Source of the DNA: Ylistrum balloti | Lineage: Eukaryota | NCBI RefSeq assembly: GCF_031769215.1 | Contig: NW_026781899.1 | Location: 310,001-374,000 of the forward strand | Direction: 5' to 3' | Length of the DNA stretch: 64,000 nucleotides | Shown here: piece after piece, positions 13,080 through 49,094 of the stretch | Position numbering within the stretch: position 1 is the first letter of the stretch | Layout: each line of letters opens with the position of its first letter | Translations under genes and position numbers: made by a program | The notes under the pieces: model-generated | What the model saw: the letters and a program-made list of their open reading frames with translations, nothing else | Told to the model about the DNA's origin: nothing | Databases searched by the model: none

Positions 13080-13417
13080 GTTTGTTTTCAAAACACCCGG
13101 ACAGAAATGTACTGAACACGAGCTGATTCGCATAGAGGTATGTGAACGAGGCTGTATCAGCTGTATTGGCTGCATCTAAACTCATTAACGGATTCGATCA
13201 TGAATGAAACGATTTTGCATAAATAACTTTTTTTTTTACTTTTGAAATATTTTACATAAATAAACAGTCACATTATTTAAACATGTGTACATTTCCATTC
13301 AGACTATCATACATTCATCATTATTTTTATAGTCATCAGCATACTTGATCGTCATCTCAATTGCATGAAACATCATCGTCGTCATTATGCATTTGTGGCC
13401 ATAACACTACTGTCCAC

Positions 13418-13448
13418 TAGAGACTTATATATCACATATACGTCTCTG
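13418..13448. mobile_element. 31-bp palindromic TIR remnant with 7-bp TSD TGTCCAC
   Basis: TGTCCAC-TAGAGACTTATATATCACATATACGTCTCTG-TGTCCAC. Confidence 0.7.
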
Positions 13449-13934
13449 TGTCCACTAACCTTTTCTCGATCCCTCTGAAATCAATTGCAGACATGGATGA
13501 CAAAATCGAAAATTTTCATATTCTTGGTCTAAAATGTTGAAGGCGTGTCCAATTGTTTGTTTGCAATCTATTCTTCTTTAAGTCCAAATTGCGATACCAA
13601 ATAAATGTATCTGAAATCGACATTTTTGCTTTTATATGTTAATAAAACGTTAACAACACGTCATTGAGTCAAACATTCGGGTCATCTCGGCATTTAATAA
13701 GAGATCCAAGGGCATCATAATTCGCCGCCATCTATATATGTCCCCTCCGGAAAACATGATAATACACAAAAATAATAAAATAAATTAAAGAACGCTCAAT
13801 CCCGCTGGTGGAACTTGAGAAGAAGTTTGAAATGTCAAAAGTTTACGCACGATGGACGGCGCACGATAAAACAAAACAAAACAAACAAATTATGCTTTAA
13901 ATGCTCTTAAGTTTTCAAAATTTATTGGAGTAAT

Positions 13935-13968
13935 CAGAGACGTATATAACGTGTTATATACGTCTCTG
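13935..13968. mobile_element. 34-bp palindromic TIR remnant with 7-bp TSD GAGTAAT
   Basis: 16-bp perfect inverted repeat CAGAGACGTATATAAC around a GT centre. Confidence 0.78.
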
Positions 13969-14433
13969 GAGTAATATTGGAAGAGAGTGATTTCAACTAT
14001 GAAAAACTCGATTCGGACTAATTTATGAAAAGGTGTGTTCATACGTGATATAACAGAAATAGATCTTTTAAATAGTGAATTTTTCACATTTTAGTTCAAC
14101 CAGTATCAAGTGCCTGTATGTATCATAATCCGTATCTAAAAATAAACTTTTACTTTAAAATTATAACAACCTTCAAATTGTACAAAATTTGTTACAAATA
14201 CATGTTTTTCATTCCTTCATTCGTTCATTTATTTAATATACGTGTCAATGATTGTATGGATTCACCAGCTGTTCCTTCGTATAGATTTGTTCAATTACAG
14301 AAACGTGTACCGTGTTGTGTCGAGTACAATCACTATAAACAATATGGCTGTTTATTGTCAAATTGACGATAGGTACTGATTCATTATTCAGTGTTTAGAC
14401 CTAGATTGATAGGTTGTTTGTGATGTATACACA

Positions 14434-14516: not shown

Positions 14517-17500
14517 GTAAAATTTTAAGTGTTTTTTTTTTTTTGCTAGGCCTGACTACAACTTAGTACAGGGTTCAGTGCGACGTATCTCATATATCCA
14601 TCATTTGTTACGAACCCTGTGATGTAACTGACAAATATAGTTAATGAAATAATTCTGATTGAGAATAGGCCGAAGCTTACTGGTTGTCAGAAAAGTTTGA
14701 CCATCTATCAGCGATTTTATTTTTCGACCTGTATTCGGACCAGCCTGCTTGGAATTGGTGACCAGTACATATCGTCTCGACATGAGACCAAGACCGTTAT
14801 GTATATAGTGAGCTGCAGATTGACAAATGAAAAGATAACTTTATTTCAATACTTAGTGTTATAAAAAAAAGAAACTTGCCAAGAAATATGCCTCATTTGA
14901 GAAAAAAGGATCGGGCAATGAAAGCTTAACCATTTAATAGGTGCACACATCAACACAGATATCCACCATTTTTACACCATGATTTTAGCTTGATTTATAT
15001 TTTCATCAAAATGTCAATCCCGTTCCATAGGTGATTTGATGTAATACATGTTTCTTCTGGGCCACTGTAGGCTAACTCAAGTGTTGCTGTGATTTAGTGA
15101 TGTCATCATAAATGAAAACGCTATCATGTTTCTGATACAAATATCAGCCAATTCAAGGTAGCGAATCTGAGATCAAATTTTTAAAATGTTTTAGAAAAAT
15201 ACTGGTTTATCATCGGTCAGTTTTTTAATGAATCTTATTGTATGAACACATTTCAGTTTATTTATGTATTAGTTTAGTTGCAATTCATCAATGGAACATA
15301 ACTCGCAAGATATAATTCTAAACAGGTTCAAAACTTATGTGTCAAAGATGTGCCTACAGTATGCTTATTTCATGATGTATATACATGTACTTATTGATGG
15401 GCAGCAGAACCTTTTCATGATTTCAGAAACATGACTGATGCATGCAAAATATTTAAAATGTGGAAAATAAATTCCATTGAAATACACTGTTAACCACCAA
15501 TCATGTTTTTGTTTTTGTTTTTGTTTTTTTTTAAATACATTGAATACCAATGCAGGGAATAGTCTTCAATTTATTGATGTGCTTTATCAATAGAAGTGAT
15601 ATTTATTTTTCTGCTCCTCCAATTTTAGATGAAAACAAGGATAGATATTGTTTAGAAAATTGACATTTGTCATGTGAAATGCACAAGGATTCCCCTGGAT
15701 CCCAAAATCAGATGTTTGATATTTTGATGTCAGGTGATTTACCAGTCAACTTTCAAAATGTATAATAGCAAGTAGTTCTTAATTTAAATAGCAACATTGA
15801 AGAAAGACATATTTTTAAGCATCAGATAAACGTATATATGCAATTATGCATGTTTTCCCTATTCATCAGTATTGTTGGAATATCAGATTTATTGATATTT
15901 TTTTCCTCTTCTTTGTTTCCTAAGAAGAACACCAAGTGACACAAGTTCAAATATTAGGAGACCAGCTAACCGTCCTCGGCAGGGGTTACAAAACTCATCA
16001 AAACATTTGTCAAGGACACCACAAAGGAAGGCAACTATTCATGAGTATGTAATACCAATATCTTGATTAAGATAAAACTCGTAAGAATTAAATCTGATTA
16101 ATGCAAAATATTTTCAGAATTAAAAAAAGAAAAAGATAATAGACAAAGTTTTATTCTGTTGTTTCAAAAACAAAAAGTGTATTTAGCAGATCAATTCGTA
16201 AATAATCAGATTCAATGCTATTTATCATGATTGTCACAAAATGAAAACGGATGCTTTAAACAAAGTATAGTACTGTTACGAAAATAAAGCTTTTTATGTT
16301 GTTGTTTTGAAGGATTCCAGATGAAGTACTTTTGAAAGTATTCAGTTTCTTTGGCGCCCAAGACTTGATTTTAGTATCACAAGTTTGTCAGCGATGGAGG
16401 AACTTAGCCAATGATAAGTATGGCAATCATTTGATTAAATACTTGTCTTATGTATCATGGCATGATGAATTGATTCACATCTACAAATTTAATGAAATTC
16501 CAAAACATGTATGTTTGTCATTTGAAAAATCCAGAATTTTTGTCTGAACTCCACCTCAGCCCAAGAGACCAAAGTACATTAATTTTGGTATGTACCATTA
16601 GGAATTAAATTTTTTCTATTTTCCATCGTCATTTCCTAAAGTCTTCAAGATTAGAAATGTATATAATATTGAAAGGTAATCGTTTGCTTTCAGTTCCTTA
16701 TGGAGGCCAATATTTTTGAAGTATGCTCCGAAAAGTGGAACTGAAGCTTCAGGAACTGGAAGTTTAAACTCTCTGTCTCAACTCAAGACAGCGTGCATCA
16801 GGAGGTGACTAATTCTTAATTCATTTTGTTCTCTGTTATAAATGACTGAGTTACGTTCAATTGTGTTATAATGTGTCCAAGAGATTTTGAAAAGATGATT
16901 TTTTTGAAAACAAACTGTGATTGAAAACTTTATTGTTAAGATTTTTTTAATTTTAGCTTCTTTTATAAAGCACAGAGTGCAAATGACTGACTCTTGATGA
17001 CTTTTGTTCACTATTCGACGATTTGTGAAAAAAAAAAAAGTCAGCTTTCAAATTGTCACTATACTTTTTCGTCACTATGGCACTTCTATGCTGCAGGCAG
17101 TTAGTAAAGGACAGAATAGATGAAATATCAACAGTTCCTCAAACTATCACTAAGAGATTTTATCATTGTAGTTTTGGAAACAGATTTAGGTCAAAACACT
17201 GATAAATACATCAACATTGAAATTTAGATATATTGTTCAAATCTTTGAAAGATTGAGAAAAATGGATAATTAAGTTCCATTGGAAATGATTCTAACCCAT
17301 CCAACACCTGTAGATCTTAGGAGCCTTATTAATACTGTATTTCTGATGTATACAGATTATTTCTCATGTTTCTGAAACTGCATCAGTTAAAGTTTTAAAA
17401 TGTCTGCGTTAAGAACTCTCAAGCAGACAACAGAACATGGTTAAGATTCCTCTTTCTTTTCTATTAATGTTCAATGGTTCAGTTGTATTCTGTTAAAAGG

Positions 17501-33908: not shown

Positions 33909-34144
33909 CAGGGACGTATAAGAATTAAACTAGGCCCGGGGTTGATTTCTCTTGCTTTAACTTTTAGATCACTACACCATGAATTAGCGAAGTCACCACT
34001 TCTTACTGATGCCAATGAGTTAGCACTGACCAGCCTAACCAGGGCCATTTTGACCACCAGTGAGATGTGAATTTAATTTATTTTAATAAATTAAAGTAAC
34101 TTATCACAAACCGTATAGGAGTCAGTCTGTAATATACGTCCCTG
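33909..34144. mobile_element. 236-bp MITE-like element with 12-bp TIR CAGGGACGTATA
   Basis: Perfect 12-bp inverted ends, one base different from the footprint family; 7-bp flanks match only 4/7. Confidence 0.45.
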
Positions 34145-39272: not shown

Positions 39273-40963
39273 TCAAAAGTCAATAGGTTCGTGTTTAATT
39301 GATCGTACATCTAGAATGATAGGAAGACCTGATGTTGTAGCATCCTCTCCAGCAATGTTTGTGTTGTCTTGCACCAAGTTTGGTTCTGGACCCAGATCCT
39401 GCACAATTTTTTCATTTTGCTGAACGCCAGACTCAGACAAATGATAAACAGGGAGAGGTTTGACATCAGTCAAGACGACAACTGTAGCAGTATCCATTTC
39501 TGCCTCTTGGACCACTGATAGCAATCCATCTTTAGATGAATGGATTACAGGGTCTTCTACTAAATCGGGAATTTCACTGTTTATGTCCTCTTTTTCCTTT
39601 TTAACTTCGCAACCGAGGTAATTTGCAACTGCAATGTTCTCTGCCTGTCCGTTTATCAGCATAGTGTCATTCCCGAGATCTTCCATTACAGTTTTCACAC
39701 AGGGATCACTCCACATTCCATCATTCTGTCCTTGGTTTTCCTGCCCTGTAGTGGATCTCATGACTGCAACATCATCACTATACACATACACCTTTTGATT
39801 TTCATTATCCCACTCTACACAGACCTCCTTAGAAGTGCCAGCTTTGATTGTCACTGGATTTGTAATGCTGTCCGATGTACCAACATTATTATCATTAGAG
39901 TTACTATTGACCTCTTGTAGCGAACCTGTACACAAGTACGAGTATCTTAATTTGGCATTCTCATCATCATCGATAATGTTCTGTTCAAGACATTCTGATG
40001 TTTCATTTGTGCGGATGTGAAGCGGATAATGGTGAAATACAACATTATCTTCACCTCCTCCAACCTCGTTTTGACATTGTCTATCAATCTCCTTCTTCAC
40101 ATGTGGATACCCCCTCGTAATATCAAAATTAGAGGTGTTTGTTGTGACTGTTTCTAGCTGAGGTATTGTCACATGGTTTCCTTGACTGCTGACATGGACT
40201 TGGATATCTAATGATTCTAGGTTTGGTTTTATATCTGTTGATACTTGTGATTCATAGGGTGCACTACAAGGTACAATTTTTATAGCATCACCTTCGTTGT
40301 TCCTTACAGAACTTATTCTTCCCACATCTTCTGTAACTTGTAAAGACTTTGTAATTTCATCTGAGAAACCTTCTCCAACATTTTGTCTCGTATTAGTCAA
40401 TTCATAGGATACCGCCTTATTAATTTCCTTTGACACAACATATGTTTTAACATGTCCAACCTTTGGTTTGATATAAACATTACTGCGTTTTACAACAGTT
40501 TGTATGACTTCCTTGTCGGCTGGTGGCATTACCACATACACATTCTTTGAAAAGAGCTTGCCATCCTCACTTTCGTCACTATCACTTCCTAAGTCAATCT
40601 TTTCATATCTGTTTTTGGCCCTGTTTTTTTCAAACTCTGAAGAGAATTGAAGGTCTAGTTCACAGAAAGGACAGGTAACATTTTCTAAACTTCTGTCCAC
40701 ATTATCCTTACCAAAAAGTAAATCTCTCATACAAACTGGGCACTGCTGTGTCTTCTTGTTTTTGTCACTGCAACGAGTTTTTGCTTTGTTTCTCACTTGT
40801 CTCTGTTTTATTTTCTCCTGAAGTTTCAATAGAACAGATCCTTCTGTTTGCATTTTAACATCAGTTATGTTTGGTTTTTTCTTTAGGGAATCTGCATTTA
40901 TTTCAGATTTTTTTCTTCTGAGAGGCCGTCCAGGTCCACGCTTCACAACAGGAACTTCACATT
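39273..40963 (-). CDS. Uncharacterised AT-hook/C4-motif nuclear protein (paralog A), large terminal exon
   Basis: About 563-codon open frame after acceptor TTTTTGCAG; GRP motif, CPVC..CPFC. Confidence 0.85.
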
Positions 40964-42265
40964 CTGCAAAAACAGAACAAAAAAAAATTAATAAGAAATT
41001 GTACAACCCTCCTCTGAGCCCAACTTGGCCATCAATTAATGTACAAAGGGCAATAACTCTGTACATAACAAAACTTGCAAACAAAGAATTTTGAAACATA
41101 TACATACTTTATGTAAGGCACTTAAAGCTTCTCTTAACAGTAAATTTATGAAATCTTTTGAAGATAAAACAGGTTAACTTTATGGCATGTTCAAATGAAA
41201 TATAGATCATAAATATATGGTTTTAGGAGCCTTATCCACAATCCAAGTTTATGACAATTTTAATTTAGTTAACAGTTCACCTTCAGATTTCTTGCCAATG
41301 GCTTGCATTGGATTCAACAAAGTATTGTGAGACTGGAACAAGTAAATTTTCTAGCCAATTATAGTAATTTAACCAATATGAAAGTATGGCCCACACTTTT
41401 TCATTTTCCAGAGAAGTCTTTGTGGGATTCTGAAGATAATAGATATTATGTCTCTTTAAAAGGTAGAAACTTTGAGATTAAGGATGCCCAGACAATATCT
41501 TTTTGTTCATGTGGATAAATGCCTTTTATTCAGCATTGTCTCAAAGAAGTGACCTGTAACTTGAGATGTCTCTGGAGCACATGACATGAATAAGTACTGA
41601 TAACATGTAGGAATCTTATGTGTAAACTTTAAAAGGAAAAAATACAATTATTTTTTTAACATTCACTAGATAACATTGATTAGTTACAAAAATGCATGTA
41701 TATTTGTAACCATATTAATTTCAAGTAGAATTAATTTCATTTTGCTCTGTTTTGTATTTTAGATCTGAACCTAAAAAATTGTATATACAAATTCATCTGA
41801 TCAATGAATAATTTACCTTATTTCTGTTTAGTGTTAATGTGATAAGAGAAGTAACTCATTTGCCAGCAAAACCATTTTTCATGAATGATTTGTACTTAGA
41901 AAACATATTCAGAGAAAGAGGATCAAAATGGATATAACTTCTAGAAATGTACATCTTTTCCGATATAAAACTTGAAAAAAAATATAGACACGTACAAAAC
42001 AGCACACCAAGACAAAGCATGACCAGTTCACTAAGTAATGTGAACCGCATCGTACGTAGATCACAGCTGCTAGCTGTGTTCTGGAACATAAATGCAAGCT
42101 CAAGAAGAAAAATACCCCTATTTATTAGTAAATACTATTTGTTATTTACTTTCTTCTATTTCTGAAACACGTACGTATGCTAAAGAATGATTTACTCTTT
42201 TTTTTCTTTCGTTATAATGAAAGTGCTGTAGATTGTGCAAAAACTGCTATTTTGTTTTCAGTTAC

Positions 42266-42438: not shown

Positions 42439-42524
42439 CATTGTTAGTAATTGTAAATTCGGAAAACGTGATAACAGTTCCGAAATGATGCGGCATCGAT
42501 TATGTAGCGGGCATTTGGTCAAAC

Positions 42525-42544
42525 CAGAGATATATACGTCTCTG
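42525..42544. mobile_element. 20-bp TIR remnant with 7-bp TSD GTCAAAC
   Basis: GTCAAAC-CAGAGATATATACGTCTCTG-GTCAAAC. Confidence 0.7.
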
Positions 42545-43679
42545 GTCAAACCGATATCAAATGATGAATAAGTTTATTAAATTCATATTTTATGTGTTTT
42601 AATTACAGAAATAAATTATAAATAATATTACTGGTCACTTTTGGACAGAGCGCTCAGAGCTTCAACATCGTCGAAGTATGATAACAGCCAGTCTAGCGAC
42701 CATGAGAGGTAGCGGCACTAGAGCCTAGAATTGTACACGTAAGTACTATGTGTAGAATTAGCAACTAGTAACTAGTAACTATTTAATAATATATTTGATT
42801 AAAGGCATATTTTTGTTTAAAAATAAAGTTGATATTTTGACAGTGTGTTAATTCAAATATCGGGCGTGGTCGATTTAACAGACAGGTGGATCCGAGAAAA
42901 CCCTCTTCACACTGACGAGGAGGATATTTTTTATATATGTAGTATAATTGGATACCAACTGTTATTTCTATATAATTTATAGATTGATTTTACAGTTGTA
43001 ATGAATATGTATATGTGGTTATATTATATGATTATCTTATCGTAAGATTGTGTTTGTATTGTAGTAATATGATGTATTTCATGTTACAGGTTTTTTGTTA
43101 TTGTATTAATAAAACTTTGAAGAAAAAGAACTCAGCAGTTGTTTTGATGACATTAAAGACAACTTTTACCCTTTATGCAATCTTATGACACATATATGCA
43201 ACATGAACACCTCCAATATGCAACATGCAATTGGCCAGATCAATACTGATTTTTCAAATTAGGAAAGTTTTTCATGTATTTTTCCTATAAAGGTGACCGA
43301 GTCCAACATTACATAATTACAGAATTGGAAGCTGCGGCAGAGTTGCATGTAAATACCTTTTTTTAGTACCTAAAACTACGAACAAGATGACGGTATGTGC
43401 CGTATTAGCCATATATATGCGTGCTGCGCCCCCGCATGGTTGCCACTGTATTGATTGTTTCTGTAGTTGAGTGCATTTAATGAAATACTGTAGATTTGAC
43501 AGCAACAGTCAGTCTATCATATATATAGTTTGAACAAGCAAGAAGGAAAACAGAAATAACTACTTAGATGTATTATATTGGAGTGTATAGCTGTGTAGAA
43601 CAGTCTATGAACTAAACTTTGATGTTTCAAATGATATACTTCTGTAATTTTGGTTTACTCTTTCTAAATAATTTTCATG

Positions 43680-46600
43680 TTATATGTACTTAATGTTACC
43701 TTTTGTGTTTGTCCTTTTAATTCCAGGCTTTCTCATTGTCGTCTTCCTTAAAATTGCTTTCTTTTTTATAGTCCTCTTTTCATGCTTTACCCCATGGTCA
43801 TGTTTATTCTTTTTTGTCCCTGTAACCCGATCTTTTCTGTTAAATGCTTCATTGATCGTTTCTTTCTGTTTCCCTGCTCTGTCACCCAGTGCTTTATCAT
43901 CTCGTGACTCATTTTCCGTGTTGACTCCGCCTTTCTGTGTAACTCCCTTATGACCCGTTTCCTTTCTGACTGATACGTTTTTGTCTGTTGCTTTTTCAAT
44001 GGGGTAATTCTCCTTTGGGTTGATACAATGTCCATCCAAACCGACTTCTAACTTAATGTATTTCTTTTTGAAAGGTAGTCGTCTGGATGTCATAGAGATG
44101 CCTTTCACTTTTTGCATACATGACTCAGAAACCTCATCTGACACGATAGCTAGTTTGGGTTTCAGCATGGTGCCTTCACTTTTGTTCAGTTTGAACAAAT
44201 CCTCTTTGGAGACCTTTTCGCCATCCAGTTTGCTTGTATACTGCCTGCGAGCAGGACCCACTTCGGAAAATTTACCACAATTCCGAGGCTCTGTGGTCTC
44301 TCTCGACTCTCCATGAAAATTCTTTTTTGCCAGAGTTGTCCCTTCTGTGTGTTTTCTTGGAGATTTATTGTTGCCCTTCATTCGATCGGTGGATAAAAGT
44401 TTCTTTTTTCTCCTCATATGTGTCGATAATGATGCTTGTCTCATTTTTCTCTGCCTTTGAACAGCTGACATCATGCTTGATTTCCTGCGCAAGTACTGAA
44501 GCTGACGTCTCTTGGCCTCGTCATGCATAGCATCTAGATCCATAAACCAACATTTTGGTTTTTTCCCGCTTTTCTGGAAGTTAAAGCGGAAACCCTTTGT
44601 GGCAAGAGGTAGCCTGAAGTTATCATCAAATCTGGTCCATGTAGAATGGGAGGTGGCATCACGAACAAAGGACAGGTTTTGCTTTGCTGGTAATTCACCA
44701 CTTTCAGGGTCTTGATTTTCAGGATTTTGTGTGTTTTTACTAGCATCACTGTGGTCTATTCTAGTGTTCCCACCTGTTTGCCCTAAACTTACTTGATCTG
44801 CGCCAATTTGAGGTGAAGCAGATTGCATTATTTCATCTTCATTCTCTTCAGATTGTAATGGTTGATTTGCTTCCATACCAAGAGTATCACAATCAATTTG
44901 AATGTCGTTTTTCTGTTGATCTTTGTTGTCATGACAACTATGATCAGGATTGCTAACAAGATTATCTTCTTCATCTCCACTTTTCTGCTGTTCTTGTCGA
45001 TATTCCTCTTTTATAGATTGTAACTGCGTGTCTTCACTCATCAAAAAGACGCAGCTGGTTACAGTTACATTCTCCTCGTCTTTTGATATCTTAATAGTGT
45101 CCTCCTTAGGATCTTTTTCCTCGAAGCAATTTCTTTGTCTATCAACTCCAGAATCTTCACAATCAGCTTGATCATCAGACCTTATTTCGTTCTCAGCATT
45201 TCCAGATGGCATCGGGTCATTTTCTTCAACACTTGGCTCCTTAACCGCATTGCTTGCGACAGAAGATAGTTGGGCATTGATAGTATCGCCAAGTGCTTTA
45301 TCCTGTACACAGTACTCCATCTCGTTAATACCCTCGTGCATTTCTGTTGTGTCATCTTTGGTATCTTCCAGATGTCTATGACTCCTGTTTTCTTTTATGT
45401 TTCCACTTGAGCTGTTGTCTTCTAAAATAACCACTGACTGACCACTTGGAAAGTTGCCAGTAGAATGTACACCGTTACAATTATCTACGGAGTGCCGTCT
45501 TTGACCATTGTCTGTTTTTTGCGTATCAATACCTTTGTCTTCCAAGTGCCTACTGATGCCAGTGTCTTTATCGACCCTACTACGACTTTGCTCACTTTGA
45601 CCTTTGTTTAAGGAAGGCCCACTTTGGTAAATGTCTATTGTGTGCCCTCTTTGATCACTGTCACCTGAAAGTTCACTTTGAATATTTTCTGTTAAAAGCT
45701 GACTTTGACAAATGTCAACAGACTGTAGATGTTCACTGTCATCAGCTAACCTTTCACTTTGACTGTTTTCTGTTGAGTGTTCATCAGCTGATTGTCTACT
45801 GTTACCCTTTTCTGCAGAGATCTCCATTTGTCTATAACCAGCTGACTGTCCATCGTCATTCATTTTTGTAGAGTGATCAGTTTGACTCTTGTCACTGGAC
45901 TGTCCACCTTTTTCTGTTGTGTTCCCCATTTGACTGTCGCTGCCAACCGATTGCTCACTTTGACTGTCCTTATCACGATGTCCACTACGACCATTTATTA
46001 TACTTGTTCCGCTGTCTAGTGAACGTCCACATTGACTTAAGTCTGTTAAGTGTTCAGTTTTAAAGTTCTGTCTGCTATCACTACCTTTCTGTCCATTATC
46101 AGTCGAGTCACTTTCAACTGTAACTTGCTTCTCACTCCGACGATTCTTTTTCGGTCTTCCCCTTCCCCTTTTTTGAGACTGCTTGTTATTTTGATTTTTT
46201 TCTGTTGTACGCTCACTTTGGACGTCTTCAGTTGACTGTTCACTGCGCCACTTACCTGTGGACTGTTCAACTTGAAAAACGTCCACGGATTGTCCTCTTT
46301 CAATGTCCTCAGCTAACCGTCCACTTTGATAGCCATTTGACGGTCCATTTTGTGTCGTTTCTGTCGAGTCCTCAATTTGAATATCGTTACTTGGCTGTTT
46401 ATCTTCACTATTTTCTGTTACATTCCCAATATGACCTCTAATGTCTTCTGAGTGCTCGCCATAACTGTCTTTACCTCGCTGTCCACTGTGATTATTTAAT
46501 GTGCAGTGCCTAACACATTTTGGATCCCTTAAATCTGTTCCTTGCTTCTCACCGTGATGATTCTTTTTCGGCCGTCCCCTTTTCTTCTTTTGAGGTTCCT

Positions 46601-49094
46601 TATCTGTGGTCTCTACTGCAATCCCATTATCTATGTTCTGTTTTTTCCCTGATTTTTTACTTGAGGTCAAATTAGTCTTCGCCTTTTTCCTTGGTCTTCC
46701 CCTTCTCTTCCTCTCAGGGTTATGCTGTTGTTCACGGGCAGCCAAGGGCGACTCACTTTTCATTTCCGAACTTTCAGTGTATGACTGAGATGCGTTTGTG
46801 TCTTCATCACTGTTGCCTTCTTGTTTAATTTGTTTCATGAGATGATTTAAACCCGTTTGATTCTCGGATGTGTCTTCATCTTCATCTATCTCCCCTTTGA
46901 TCAATGTCATGTCTAATTTATCCAAGCTCTTTAATTTTTCGATCTCCTTCTTGGTATGCATTCGTTTGTAATGCAGCTGTAACTGACTGTGCCTTTTATA
47001 TGGCTTCTTGCATAATTCACAAAAGAAAGCATAGTTCCCATGCATTGTACCCACATGAGCCAAGAGGTTTTGTTGAGATCTACCTCCATATGGACAAAGA
47101 GGACAGCGATAGGGACGGTTTGTGAGGTCATGAGTTACCATATGCGCTTGCTTATTTGACTTGCTAGCAAAGGTCCGACCACAAACTTCACAGGAGAATG
47201 GTCTTATACCATTATGTAGCTGCATATGCTTTCCAAGAGACGACTTGACCTTGAAAGTCTTTTCACAAATGTCACACTTAAATGGTCTTTCGGTAGTGTG
47301 CCTTTGGGTGTGCTTGTTCCTTGCTGATGGCGATTTGAAACATTTTCCACATAAAGGACACGGGAACTTCCTTTCTTCTGAGTGAACATGCATGTGTTTT
47401 GATAAATCTGATTTAGTTTTACAGGCTTGTTGACAACCAGGATGTGTACATGGAAATGATCTAACATCACTGTGCTTAAACTTGTGGAGATTCAGTTCAT
47501 AATTTGTTTTACATCGAAAATCACACTCTTCACATGAAAGTGGTTTTAATGAAGTATGACGATAGATGTGATATTTCAGGTCACACGATCTCTTAAAAGA
47601 ATGTCCACAAATTTCACAATGGAATGGACGGTCATCCACATGGCTCAAAAGATGACTTGAAACATTTCTCCTCCATTTTGTAGTGAAGTCGCAATAAGGG
47701 CATTTGTAATTTTTGACTTTTGAATGTTTAGCCTGATGACGCTGCAGGTCAATTCGAGATCTGGAAGCGTAAGGGCACAGTTCACACTTAAATGGTTTAG
47801 CTTTGGTGTGTTTTGATTCATGTTCCAAAAATGATCCTCTACTTCTAGCTTTGAAGTCACAGTATGAACAGTATATAAATGGCATGACATGTGTTTTCCT
47901 ATGTTTTATCAGCTTAGGACGTTCCTGGAACACCAAGTCACAACGATCACATTTGAAATTTCCAATCACAGGGGGCCTGCCTATTCTATGTTTTTTCCTC
48001 CTCAATTTTTTCTGCCGACCATGTATACCTTTACTTTTTGCTAGTGAACTTGATGTAAGTTCTTGGTTATTGTCACGAGAAAAGGAAGTGTCTTGCTCAA
48101 CTTTGATTTGTTTCAAAGCTGGTTTAGAATTACTCTTGTAATTCTTTGGAGGCATGCTTAAATGTCCTGTACTTTCACATTCTGTCGGTGATTGGGTATT
48201 GATATCAGCAACACGAAATCCAATTATTCTTTGCTGGTCTTGCTCTGACACACTGGTGTAGGAATCTTCGTTATCTGCTGATATAGAACTTGTTGAAGCT
48301 GTTGCTGTCTTGGTTGCTGTTTTCAGCGGCCTACCTCTTTTTCGTTGTGGAGCGATTTCAAAAGGAAGAGTTGATTGAAGCTTATTACTCTCTGCCGATT
48401 TTCCAAGATTAGCTAACTTCACGCTCTGTTCATCAAACACGTTACAGTTGCTTTCAAGTATATTCTCTGTAGCATTAACCCTAGATTCTCCTGTTTCTGT
48501 TCCGTCTCCTCCAACAAATACATAATCGGCTTCCTCTGTATCGTTTGCAATTTCAAACACAAAGGATTCTGACTGTCTCTTCTTTTTTGATTTTTTAGGT
48601 GTCACCCTTGCATGTGTTTTGTTCTTTTTGCGGCGTTTCTTACGAGCTGGACTTTCTCCGTAAGCTTTAATCATGGGAGACACTTCTTCAGTTGTGCCGT
48701 CTGAAAGGCTGCTACTTTGTGGTTCTGGCAAACAGACATTTTGTAGTGCTAGGTTACATTCATTGGCACTATCAACATCTGACAGGGTTGGGAGTATACT
48801 CCAACAAACATCTACTGTTTTCTCAGAATCTTTACTGCTCTGTTCACAATCAGTCTCTTTCTTGGATATCTGAACAGGGATGTGTGCTATATTGTAGATA
48901 TTTGCAGATGGTGCCACACTGGTGTTGAATTGTGGTAAATTCATTGGAGTAACAGCCTCTGTTCCAGTTTTCATTGTCAATGAGTCATTTGTTGTACTAT
49001 TTAACACCTGGAAAGGTTTCGTTTCCATTTCGTCGTCATCTGAGATGTTCTCGTACACAAATCCACTTATCTTCTGTGAATCATAACACTCCAT
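43680..49094 (-). CDS. Large C2H2 zinc-finger protein (1804 aa; 12 fingers, several AT-hooks), single coding exon
   Basis: 12 tandem CxxC..HxxxH fingers counted at about 46955-47955, some with linkers like TERPF/GIRPF; GRP AT-hook-like motifs; acceptor TTCCAG three bases before the ATG. Confidence 0.93.
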   Translation of the reverse strand: MECYDSQKISGFVYENISDDDEMETKPFQVLNSTTNDSLTMKTGTEAVTPMNLPQFNTSVAPSANIYNIAHIPVQISKKETDCEQSSKDSEKTVDVCWSILPTLSDVDSANECNLALQNVCLPEPQSSSLSDGTTEEVSPMIKAYGESPARKKRRKKNKTHARVTPKKSKKKRQSESFVFEIANDTEEADYVFVGGDGTETGESRVNATENILESNCNVFDEQSVKLANLGKSAESNKLQSTLPFEIAPQRKRGRPLKTATKTATASTSSISADNEDSYTSVSEQDQQRIIGFRVADINTQSPTECESTGHLSMPPKNYKSNSKPALKQIKVEQDTSFSRDNNQELTSSSLAKSKGIHGRQKKLRRKKHRIGRPPVIGNFKCDRCDLVFQERPKLIKHRKTHVMPFIYCSYCDFKARSRGSFLEHESKHTKAKPFKCELCPYASRSRIDLQRHQAKHSKVKNYKCPYCDFTTKWRRNVSSHLLSHVDDRPFHCEICGHSFKRSCDLKYHIYRHTSLKPLSCEECDFRCKTNYELNLHKFKHSDVRSFPCTHPGCQQACKTKSDLSKHMHVHSEERKFPCPLCGKCFKSPSARNKHTQRHTTERPFKCDICEKTFKVKSSLGKHMQLHNGIRPFSCEVCGRTFASKSNKQAHMVTHDLTNRPYRCPLCPYGGRSQQNLLAHVGTMHGNYAFFCELCKKPYKRHSQLQLHYKRMHTKKEIEKLKSLDKLDMTLIKGEIDEDEDTSENQTGLNHLMKQIKQEGNSDEDTNASQSYTESSEMKSESPLAAREQQHNPERKRRGRPRKKAKTNLTSSKKSGKKQNIDNGIAVETTDKEPQKKKRGRPKKNHHGEKQGTDLRDPKCVRHCTLNNHSGQRGKDSYGEHSEDIRGHIGNVTENSEDKQPSNDIQIEDSTETTQNGPSNGYQSGRLAEDIERGQSVDVFQVEQSTGKWRSEQSTEDVQSERTTEKNQNNKQSQKRGRGRPKKNRRSEKQVTVESDSTDNGQKGSDSRQNFKTEHLTDLSQCGRSLDSGTSIINGRSGHRDKDSQSEQSVGSDSQMGNTTEKGGQSSDKSQTDHSTKMNDDGQSAGYRQMEISAEKGNSRQSADEHSTENSQSERLADDSEHLQSVDICQSQLLTENIQSELSGDSDQRGHTIDIYQSGPSLNKGQSEQSRSRVDKDTGISRHLEDKGIDTQKTDNGQRRHSVDNCNGVHSTGNFPSGQSVVILEDNSSSGNIKENRSHRHLEDTKDDTTEMHEGINEMEYCVQDKALGDTINAQLSSVASNAVKEPSVEENDPMPSGNAENEIRSDDQADCEDSGVDRQRNCFEEKDPKEDTIKISKDEENVTVTSCVFLMSEDTQLQSIKEEYRQEQQKSGDEEDNLVSNPDHSCHDNKDQQKNDIQIDCDTLGMEANQPLQSEENEDEIMQSASPQIGADQVSLGQTGGNTRIDHSDASKNTQNPENQDPESGELPAKQNLSFVRDATSHSTWTRFDDNFRLPLATKGFRFNFQKSGKKPKCWFMDLDAMHDEAKRRQLQYLRRKSSMMSAVQRQRKMRQASLSTHMRRKKKLLSTDRMKGNNKSPRKHTEGTTLAKKNFHGESRETTEPRNCGKFSEVGPARRQYTSKLDGEKVSKEDLFKLNKSEGTMLKPKLAIVSDEVSESCMQKVKGISMTSRRLPFKKKYIKLEVGLDGHCINPKENYPIEKATDKNVSVRKETGHKGVTQKGGVNTENESRDDKALGDRAGKQKETINEAFNRKDRVTGTKKNKHDHGVKHEKRTIKKKAILRKTTMRKPGIKRTNTKGNIKYI

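What the first reader, a model, noticed from the sequence alone, without database searches (positions are those of the whole stretch)
13928..13975. Tiny palindromic inserts with 7-bp TSDs: candidate P-element-type excision footprints concentrated in promoters
Seen: GAGTAAT-CAGAGACGTATATAAC-GT-GTTATATACGTCTCTG-GAGTAAT, i.e. 34 bp (17+17) of near-perfect inverted repeat inside an exact 7-bp duplication. Two more copies with different exact 7-bp duplications lie at 13418 and 42525, and all three sit within about 0.5 kb of an inferred start codon. Established: P-superfamily elements start CA and end TG and make 7-8 bp TSDs (7 bp in Galileo). Drosophila P transposase cuts with a 17-nt stagger, so repaired donor sites often keep about 16-17 bp of each end, and P elements favour gene 5' ends. 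Inference: these are excision scars, or ultra-short MITEs, of a P-like family that targeted promoters here and left AT-rich palindromes in them.
Basis: partly seen in the sequence, partly recalled or inferred. Interest (0 to 1): 0.8.

Follow-up and report, generated by a model that had tools for sequence, protein, structure and literature searches.

The report
Scallop P-transposon excision scars
The tiny palindromes are real. They are most likely scars left when a P-type cut-and-paste transposon jumped out of about a thousand sites in a scallop genome, which suggests the unusually long staggered cut known from the fruit-fly P element also occurs in molluscs.

Summary
Observation confirmed. Window 13935-13968 (34 bp), 13418-13448 (31 bp) and 42525-42544 (20 bp) are palindromic inserts ending CAGAG...CTCTG, each inside an exact 7-bp duplication.

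The genome is Ylistrum balloti (saucer scallop). The 14-nt end occurs 1341 times against 4 for the control. 279 loci have both ends intact and 0-30 nt between them; only 2 have 31-60 nt.

In 67 copies read, neither side clearly keeps more than 19 nt of the end, although full-type ends run on (about 23 nt here, 28 nt in Pecten maximus). The junctions vary, with microhomology and filler. This fits repair scars and not an amplified MITE.

The end is tied to P-type transposase genes. It abuts internal transposase DNA in deleted copies at C244 and C461, and closes a near-complete element at C1316. In P. maximus a 13.7-kb element has a related 28-bp inverted repeat, an exact 7-bp duplication and a 950-aa P-type transposase.

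The target motif (GTAATAT-like, palindromic) resembles Galileo's GTANTAC.

Not supported: the promoter claim (only one copy lies within 0.5 kb of a plausible ATG; no genome-wide test). No empty allele was seen in four samples. No two-ended autonomous copy was recovered in this genome.

The parts
13928..13934 (.). left copy of the 7-bp target-site duplication GAGTAAT
13935..13968 (.). 34-bp footprint: 16 nt of one transposon end joined to 18 nt of the other (orientation ambiguous), no mutations
   Evidence: (listed as C42:323935-323968)
13969..13975 (.). right copy of the duplication GAGTAAT
13411..13417 (.). left copy of the duplication TGTCCAC
13418..13448 (.). 31-bp older footprint: 19 nt of one end (two substitutions) joined to 12-13 nt of the other; present in contigs of all four samples laid
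13449..13455 (.). right copy of the duplication TGTCCAC
42518..42524 (.). left copy of the duplication GTCAAAC
42525..42544 (.). 20-bp footprint: 6 nt of one end joined to 14 nt of the other
42545..42551 (.). right copy of the duplication GTCAAAC
33909..34144 (.). possibly related 236-bp insert: 12-nt inverted ends of a CAGGG variant of the same end, single-copy interior, no duplication; perhaps a scar with captured filler DNA (uncertain)
   Evidence: the CAGGG variant end is also seen at C112:78297

Best explanation
The inserts are donor-site scars of a P-superfamily cut-and-paste transposon of scallops. The proposed sequence of events is as follows. The element inserted at a GTAATAT-like, roughly palindromic target and duplicated 7 bp. 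On excision the transposase cut one strand at the element tip and the other strand about 17-19 nt inside the inverted repeat. Each flank therefore kept a 3' overhang carrying up to 19 nt of the end. End joining then fused the two overhangs with trimming, microhomology or filler. The result is a 20-46-bp palindrome still bracketed by both copies of the 7-bp duplication. Because the element moves without copying itself, each jump on the lineage adds one scar, so scars (about 10^3) vastly outnumber elements. Shown here: the inserts, the duplications, the target motif, the 19-nt ceiling, the variety of junctions, and the physical link of the end to P-type transposase genes. Inferred: the staggered cut itself, its exact length, and end joining as the repair route.
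For: Abundance: the 14-mer end has 1341 hits against 4 for the control, and 279 loci have both ends intact with 0-30 nt between. 17 of 20 apparently single ends are also short inserts with a decayed or trimmed partner. Duplications: 14 of 20 are exact 7/7 and 5 are 6/7. Ceiling: only 2 loci have 31-60 nt between the ends, and both are compound. My hand tally of 47 independent loci gives lengths of 24-46 bp with a mode at 38 (19+19), then 35 and 36 (18+18). Everything above 38 bp is two ends of at most 19 nt plus filler, sometimes templated (C64:1491657). Identical microhomology junctions recur at unrelated sites. The end continues beyond nt 19 in full-type ends...CACAGATT at C38, C339 and C441...CAGAGATT at C1316, a 20-nt inverted repeat in L014, and 28 nt in P. 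maximus. The ceiling is therefore not simply the repeat length. Link to transposase: 5 of 13 P-type transposase loci have the exact end within a few kb. At C244:175383 and at C461:174234/187783, 17-21 nt of the end abut internal transposase DNA. C1316:10335 closes an element with the same gene layout as P. maximus. The domains PF21787, PF21788 and PF21789 are present. The P. maximus element L047:6285-19955 has a perfect 28-bp inverted repeat that shares 13 of its first 14 nt with this end, an exact duplication ATTCACT and a 950-aa P-type transposase. A second P. maximus transposase locus has a T-type end. Target motif: symmetric T-n-n-[R-T-t-n-a-A-Y]-n-n-A. 720 ends are followed by a 7-mer within 3 mismatches of GTAATAT, against 31 for the control. 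This resembles Galileo's GTANTAC (PMC4168063). The Drosophila P element's 17-nt staggered cut is established (PMC7776569).
Against: No copy with two inverted repeats, a duplication and an intact transposase was recovered in Y. balloti itself. No site with empty, full and scar alleles was seen; the 13418 copy, and the right junction of the 13935 copy, are present in contigs of all four samples. Some junction forms recur (the 24-mer and the 31-mer, three times each), as a mobile mini-element would also give. Blunt 19+19 joins have no terminal microhomology, so the repair chemistry is not obvious. The per-side tally was made by hand on 67 copies, not on all loci. The transposases lack a detectable THAP domain, so this lineage differs from the biochemically studied P element and its cut geometry is untested.
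Confidence: 0.78

Rival explanations
1. They are ultra-short MITEs. On this reading, mini-elements made only of two fused ends were themselves mobilised by the P-type transposase and amplified. Each copy would then be an insertion, not a scar.
For: About a thousand copies with clean 7-bp duplications and a transposase-type target motif. Some identical forms occur at several loci. Full-length elements are very rare, as is often the case for MITE families.
Against: There is no dominant form. My hand tally of 47 loci gives 13 length classes and many different junctions, including one-sided truncations (6+14 at 42525; L008 has lost one end entirely) and templated fillers. The inserts lack nt 20 onward of the inverted repeat, which full-type ends carry. 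Drosophila P needs more than 100 bp at each end, and Anopheles P-MITEs keep somewhat under 100 bp (PMC1562414). Sizes drop abruptly, 279 against 2 loci, rather than forming a family of fixed length.
Confidence: 0.13
2. They are remnants of a hAT-family element. Ends beginning CAGAG are typical of hobo, Hermes and Tol2 (from my own knowledge).
For: The first five bases resemble hAT ends.
Against: The duplications are 7 bp, not 8; the base outside the 7-mer usually does not match. hAT excision leaves flank-derived hairpin scars and not 19 nt of each end (established knowledge). The end is physically joined to P-type transposase DNA and not to hAT.
Confidence: 0.02
3. They are ordinary internal-deletion derivatives made by aborted gap repair or replication slippage. 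On this reading the staggered cut plays no special role.
For: Internally deleted copies do exist (C244, C461). P elements are known to produce them (PMC4168063).
Against: Deletions with random breakpoints should give a broad spread of retained lengths. Instead both sides stop at or below 19 nt in 67 copies, and only 2 loci have 31-60 nt between the ends. Even the deleted copies keep just 17-21 nt of the end on the deleted side.
Confidence: 0.05
4. They are a conserved host regulatory palindrome (a TATA / ACGT-core motif) and not transposon debris.
For: AT-rich palindromes with ACGT or CACGTG cores resemble factor-binding sites. Two copies lie between divergently oriented genes.
Against: Each copy is flanked by a different 7-bp direct duplication. 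The centres vary. The flanks are unrelated, with loose-end agreement of about 0.45. The same end closes transposase-bearing elements.
Confidence: 0.02

Closest known systems
Drosophila melanogaster P element and its excision footprints
   Same: Cut-and-paste element with ends CA...TG. Its transposase has an RNase H fold interrupted by a GTP-binding insertion domain. It makes a long staggered cut (17 nt) inside the inverted repeat (PMC7776569). From my own knowledge of the older literature, repaired donor sites keep both duplications plus up to about 17 nt of each end. It also produces internally deleted derivatives.
   Different: Drosophila P has 8-bp duplications, a 31-bp inverted repeat and a THAP domain. 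The scallop family has 7-bp duplications, retention up to 19 nt, no detectable THAP and a second, convergent ORF. Its scars are fixed and number about 10^3 in a wild genome, whereas the fly footprints are laboratory events.
Galileo (P superfamily, Drosophila)
   Same: 7-bp duplications with a palindromic target consensus, GTANTAC or GTATTAC (PMC4168063). The scallop sites are GTAATAT-like, R-T-t-n-a-A-Y.
   Different: Galileo has very long, foldback-like inverted repeats and a THAP domain. No comparable catalogue of footprints was found for it in the paper read.
Zebrafish Pdre / THAP9 elements
   Same: P-type transposase outside insects, with short inverted repeats (13 bp) (PMC7776569; PMC10983969).
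   Different: They have 8-bp duplications and a THAP domain. The preprint I read mentions a staggered cut only for the Drosophila enzyme.
P-MITEs of Anopheles gambiae
   Same: Short non-autonomous relatives of P elements that share only their ends with the autonomous copies (PMC1562414).
   Different: Those keep somewhat under 100 bp of each end and form families of fixed structure. The scallop inserts keep at most 19 nt per side and have variable junctions.

Membership tests
P superfamily of DNA transposons | Transposase with RNase H-like catalytic domain split by a GTP-binding insertion domain | tested here: met
   PF21787, PF21788 and PF21789 are all above cut-off in the Y. balloti ORFs and in P0002/P0006. 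These genes are physically linked to the end.
P superfamily of DNA transposons | 7-8-bp target-site duplication | tested here: met
   14 of 20 short inserts have an exact 7/7 duplication and 5 have 6/7. The full P. maximus element has an exact 7-bp ATTCACT.
P superfamily of DNA transposons | Terminal inverted repeats beginning CA and ending TG | tested here: met
   CAGAG...CTCTG in all copies. A perfect 28-bp inverted repeat in P. maximus.
P superfamily of DNA transposons | N-terminal THAP (C2CH) DNA-binding domain | tested here: not met
   No PF05485 hit in P0002, P0006 or the C1316 N-terminal frame. No C2CH pattern in the first 300 residues of five molluscan homologues. The N-terminus is basic and then acidic, low-complexity. 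A divergent domain cannot be excluded.
P superfamily of DNA transposons | Palindromic target-site motif centred on the duplication | tested here: met
   Symmetrised matrix of 20 sites (T at duplication position 2 / A at position 6 in 28 of 40, p about 1e-6). 720 against 31 control hits for the end followed by a GTAATAT-like 7-mer.
P superfamily of DNA transposons | Long (about 17-nt) staggered donor cleavage | tested here: inconclusive
   Indirect only. Retention is capped at 19 nt per side although the repeat is longer. Biochemistry is needed.
Transposon excision footprint | Both copies of the duplication kept, with only terminal nucleotides of the element between them | tested here: met
Transposon excision footprint | Independent, heterogeneous repair junctions (trimming, microhomology, filler) | tested here: met
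   My hand tally gives 13 length classes among 47 loci, with fillers of 1-16 nt, some templated. One-sided losses are seen.
Transposon excision footprint | A longer element with the same ends exists | tested here: inconclusive
   Met in the sister genus (L047). In Y. balloti only one-ended or internally deleted copies were reached (C1316, C244, C461), and one 1296-bp non-coding copy with 20-nt inverted repeats (L014).
Transposon excision footprint | Occupied or empty alleles at the same site in other individuals or species | tested here: not met
   Contigs of four samples span the 13418 scar and carry the right junction of the 13935 scar; no empty allele appears. Contigs drop rare variants, and the left junction of the 13935 scar falls in a contig break.
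MITE | Family of near-uniform length and internal sequence amplified by transposition | tested here: not met
   Lengths of 20-46 bp with many junction types. Abrupt absence above about 46 bp.
hAT superfamily | 8-bp target-site duplication | tested here: not met
   The duplications are 7 bp; the eighth base usually differs.

The most novel reading that the evidence does not exclude
The roughly 10^3 scars are a natural record of individual jumps of a THAP-less, two-gene branch of the P superfamily. They would show that the long staggered donor cut, so far measured only for the Drosophila enzyme, is ancestral to the superfamily and is about 19 nt here. Each scar also deposits a TATA-rich palindrome, and some junction classes create an ACGT or CACGTG (E-box-like) core. 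The family may therefore have seeded regulatory motifs at hot spots such as the divergent intergenic region at 13.4-14.0 kb.
Probability: 0.3. Interest if true: 0.75.

Novelty: new variant of a known kind. Interest (0 to 1): 0.6.

Why it matters
Cut-and-paste transposons usually leave scars too small to recognise, so their past activity cannot be seen once the elements are lost. Here the scars are long enough to count, date and map. They give a direct tally of jumps, a target-site logo that does not depend on surviving elements, and a readout of how a mollusc germ line repaired double-strand breaks (trimming, microhomology, templated filler). They also predict a testable biochemical property, a cut 17-19 nt inside the inverted repeat, for a P-type transposase that lacks the THAP domain and travels with a second gene. 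That bears on how the P/THAP9 family's unusual chemistry evolved.

Tried and rejected
1. PF12017 (the classic P-transposase model) found nothing, and nothing in the control genomes either, so the result is uninformative. PF21787 worked instead.

I could not read beyond C1316:15597 or C915:28501 to find the left end.

3. A pattern for the expected left end of C1316 plus its flank GTAATAT did not list C1316 at 0-1 mismatch. The list was truncated at 2 mismatches. The search revealed the target preference instead.

4. The 1296-bp two-ended copy L014 has a unique interior apart from a 176-bp high-copy repeat. It is not a propagated non-autonomous family.

5. The 236-bp CAGGG-ended insert in the window also has a unique interior and no duplication.

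6. The group B2 transposase copies (C512, C1081, C510), which include the intact annotated gene, show no such end in the DNA I held.

7. The look-up of encoding contigs would not return the window's own genome.

8. No inverted repeat was found around the Argopecten irradians copy.

9. The reads test for empty alleles was negative or uninformative.

10. Local clustering: three copies in 64 kb against about 0.1 expected looks striking but is post hoc. In the listed samples, pairs within 30 kb are at most mildly enriched. Very tight clusters of 200 bp or less do recur (C247, C168, C188).

11. Four literature searches found no earlier description of genome-wide P-type footprints. That is no proof that none exists.

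Full report
**The observation.** At 13928-13975 a 34-bp palindrome ending CAGAG...CTCTG sits between two copies of GAGTAAT. At 13411-13455 a 31-bp copy with two substitutions sits between two copies of TGTCCAC. At 42518-42551 a 20-bp copy sits between two copies of GTCAAAC. A relaxed scan of the window finds no further clear copies. It does find a 236-bp insert at 33909-34144 whose 12-nt inverted ends are a CAGGG variant of the same end.

**Host genome.** The genome is 648.5 Mb in 1372 contigs. A protein annotated in Ylistrum balloti (P0006) is 100% identical to an ORF on contig C512, and the record length matches the contig length.

**Abundance.**
- The 14-nt end occurs 1341 times on the two strands, against 4 for the reversed control.
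- 279 loci have both 12-nt ends intact with 0-30 nt between them.
- I fetched 20 ends that looked single. 17 of them were also short inserts whose partner end was trimmed or had decayed, often by CpG-to-TpG change.
- A rough estimate from these figures is 1000-1500 such loci.

**Duplications and target.**
- Of 20 short inserts, 14 have an exact 7-bp duplication, 5 have 6/7 and one has none. A displaced control 7-mer never exceeds 5/7. The base outside the 7-mer usually does not match, so the duplication is 7 bp and not 8.
- The reconstructed targets show a symmetric motif, T-n-n-[R-T-t-n-a-A-Y]-n-n-A.
- I searched for one end followed by GTAATAT, intending to find the partner end of a particular copy. 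It returned 720 hits within three mismatches against 31 for the control. Five were exact, and the 34 one-mismatch hits were mostly single-base variants of the 7-mer such as GTTATAT, GTATTAT and GTAAAAT.
- This is close to the GTANTAC target of Galileo, the P-superfamily element with 7-bp duplications (PMC4168063).

**Anatomy of the inserts.** I tallied by hand the 47 independent loci listed.
- Lengths run from 24 to 46 bp. The mode is 38 bp (19+19), followed by 35 bp, then 31, 33 and 36 bp (36 bp being mostly 18+18).
- Every insert longer than 38 bp is two ends of at most 19 nt plus 1-16 nt of filler. In some the filler repeats a piece of the end, as at C64:1491657 and C108:2086467.
- Shorter inserts are trimmed on one or both sides. 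They are often joined at small palindromic microhomologies (TATATA, ACG), which explains why some junctions recur at unrelated sites.
- Only two loci in the genome have 31-60 nt between intact ends. Both are two scars lying side by side.

**The ceiling is not the repeat length.** Full-type ends continue past nt 19:
- ...CACAGATT at C38, C339 and C441, and ...CAGAGATT at C1316;
- a 20-nt inverted repeat in the 1296-bp copy L014;
- a 28-nt inverted repeat in Pecten maximus.

**What element owns the end.** The genome has 13 loci matching the P-type transposase RNase H domain, and 27 fragments by protein search, in several subfamilies. Five of the 13 have the exact 14-mer within a few kb, where about 2% each would be expected by chance.
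- At C244:175383, 17-21 nt of the end abut DNA from the N-terminal coding region of a group A transposase.
- At C461:174234, and at its duplicate at 187783, about 17 nt abut the middle of the RNase H domain of a C770-type transposase. Both cases are internally deleted copies that keep just the tip on the deleted side.
- At C1316:10335 the end continues as a full-type repeat. It is followed 444 bp inside by a second ORF and then by a convergent transposase carrying PF21787, PF21788 and PF21789.

**The full element in Pecten maximus.** The homologous gene in P. maximus (P0002, 950 aa) lies in a 13,671-bp element, L047:6285-19955.
- Its inverted repeats are perfect over 28 bp and share 13 of their first 14 nt with the Y. 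balloti end, CAGAGAC(A/G)TATATA.
- Its duplication, ATTCACT, is an exact 7 bp.
- It has the same two-gene layout, including the position of the first exon of ORF2 near the right end.
- A second P. maximus transposase locus has a T-type end next to a GTATAAC flank.

**Mechanism.** The Drosophila P transposase cuts the 3' strand at the tip and the 5' strand 17 nt inside the inverted repeat (PMC7776569). Each donor flank is therefore left with a 17-nt 3' overhang of end sequence. The scallop inserts look like such overhangs joined by end joining. Both duplications are kept, each side has at most 19 nt of the end, the junctions vary, and there is little beyond that size. The internally deleted copies fit a one-sided version of the same repair. 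I infer a stagger of 17-19 nt; its exact length is not fixed by these data. A non-replicative element adds one scar per jump on the lineage. This explains why scars outnumber full-type ends by about two orders of magnitude (about five full-type ends).

**Rivals.**
- A mobile TIR-only mini-MITE would share the duplications and the target motif. It predicts a dominant form and needs the transposase to act on ends that lack nt 20 onward. Neither fits the data, but static data cannot exclude some remobilisation. I give it 0.13.
- hAT origin is contradicted by the 7-bp duplications and by the linked transposase.
- Random internal deletion is contradicted by the sharp ceiling.
- A host regulatory motif is contradicted by the duplications and the unrelated flanks.

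**What is not supported.**
- Promoter preference. The 13418 copy is about 0.25-0.35 kb upstream of candidate ATGs of a minus-strand exon, and an exon with weak, sub-threshold LRR similarity lies further down that strand. The 13935 copy is about 0.8 kb from those ATGs, and an unknown distance from the start of a plus-strand F-box gene whose first recognisable exon is at 16332. The 42525 copy lies in a 2.6-kb spacer between two minus-strand ORFs, about 1.4 kb from the nearer ATG. There was no annotation or RNA data to test this genome-wide. The strong target motif is an alternative driver.
- Polymorphism. Contigs of four samples from two studies span the 13418 scar and begin inside the 13935 scar, running through its right junction. 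No empty allele is seen. These scars are therefore old or fixed.
- THAP. The predicted THAP domain was not found.

**Literature.** Four full-text searches found no description of a genome-wide set of P-type footprints. In the zebrafish THAP9 preprint I read, a staggered cut is mentioned only for the Drosophila enzyme. That laboratory excisions of Drosophila P elements retain about 16-17 nt of each end is from my own knowledge of the older literature; I did not check it here.

**Earlier notes of this scan.** That note is unchecked, but it matches the 36-bp class seen.

**Verdict.** The excision-scar reading is well supported (0.78). The promoter-targeting part is unsupported. This is a new variant of a known kind: a THAP-less, two-gene, Galileo-like P-superfamily transposon of scallops, whose jumps left about a thousand recognisable scars.

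Noticed in passing
G000:C35:519196-520489 and G000:C110:126352-126843 (not in the window): Tandem arrays built from the transposon end: at least 45 copies of the 14-mer at a 27-bp period on C35, and a roughly 43-bp-period array of end-tip repeats on C110.
   Followed up: no
L047:10001-19955 (Pecten maximus), L048:10001-16874 (Argopecten irradians), G000:C1316:10335-15597: The scallop P-type elements carry two convergent genes. One is a transposase of about 930-950 aa with no detectable THAP domain. The other, ORF2, has a single weak C2H2-like finger near its N-terminus in all three genera. A precomputed annotation gives ORF2 a THAP9_C domain, which my own scan of the ORF pieces did not reproduce.
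   Followed up: partly
window 13794-13860: A fragment of a very high-copy repeat ending in an (AAAAC)n-like tail, with contig word depth about 200 times the single-copy level. It lies 75 bp from the 13935 scar and breaks the contigs of all four samples there.
   Followed up: no
window 33909-34144: A 236-bp insert with 12-nt inverted ends of a CAGGG variant of the transposon end. The interior is single-copy in the genome and there is no duplication. It may be a scar with captured filler DNA.
   Followed up: partly
L014:101-1396 (G000:C19:456270-457565): A 1296-bp copy with 20-nt inverted repeats and a 5/7 duplication. Its interior is unique except for a 176-bp repeat that has hundreds of copies at 93-98% identity (SINE-like).
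   Followed up: partly
G000:C247:80825-80920, C168:835759-835827, C188:1115692-1115861: Two or three scars within 70-170 bp of each other, some sharing the same GTAATAT target. These may be insertion hot spots or repeated local reinsertion.
   Followed up: no
G000:C461:172559-176755 and 186110-190300: A 4.2-kb segmental duplication at 99% identity that includes an internally deleted transposon copy together with its flanks.
   Followed up: no
G000:C488:1042339-1048626: A satellite of at least 6 kb with a 32-bp period. Its unit partly resembles the inner part of the inverted repeat (…TTACACAGATTGGAAGC).
   Followed up: no
window 43680-49094 (-) and 39273-41105 (-): Uninterrupted ORFs of 1804 aa (with multiple C2H2 zinc fingers visible in the translation) and 610 aa flank the 42525 scar.
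   Followed up: no
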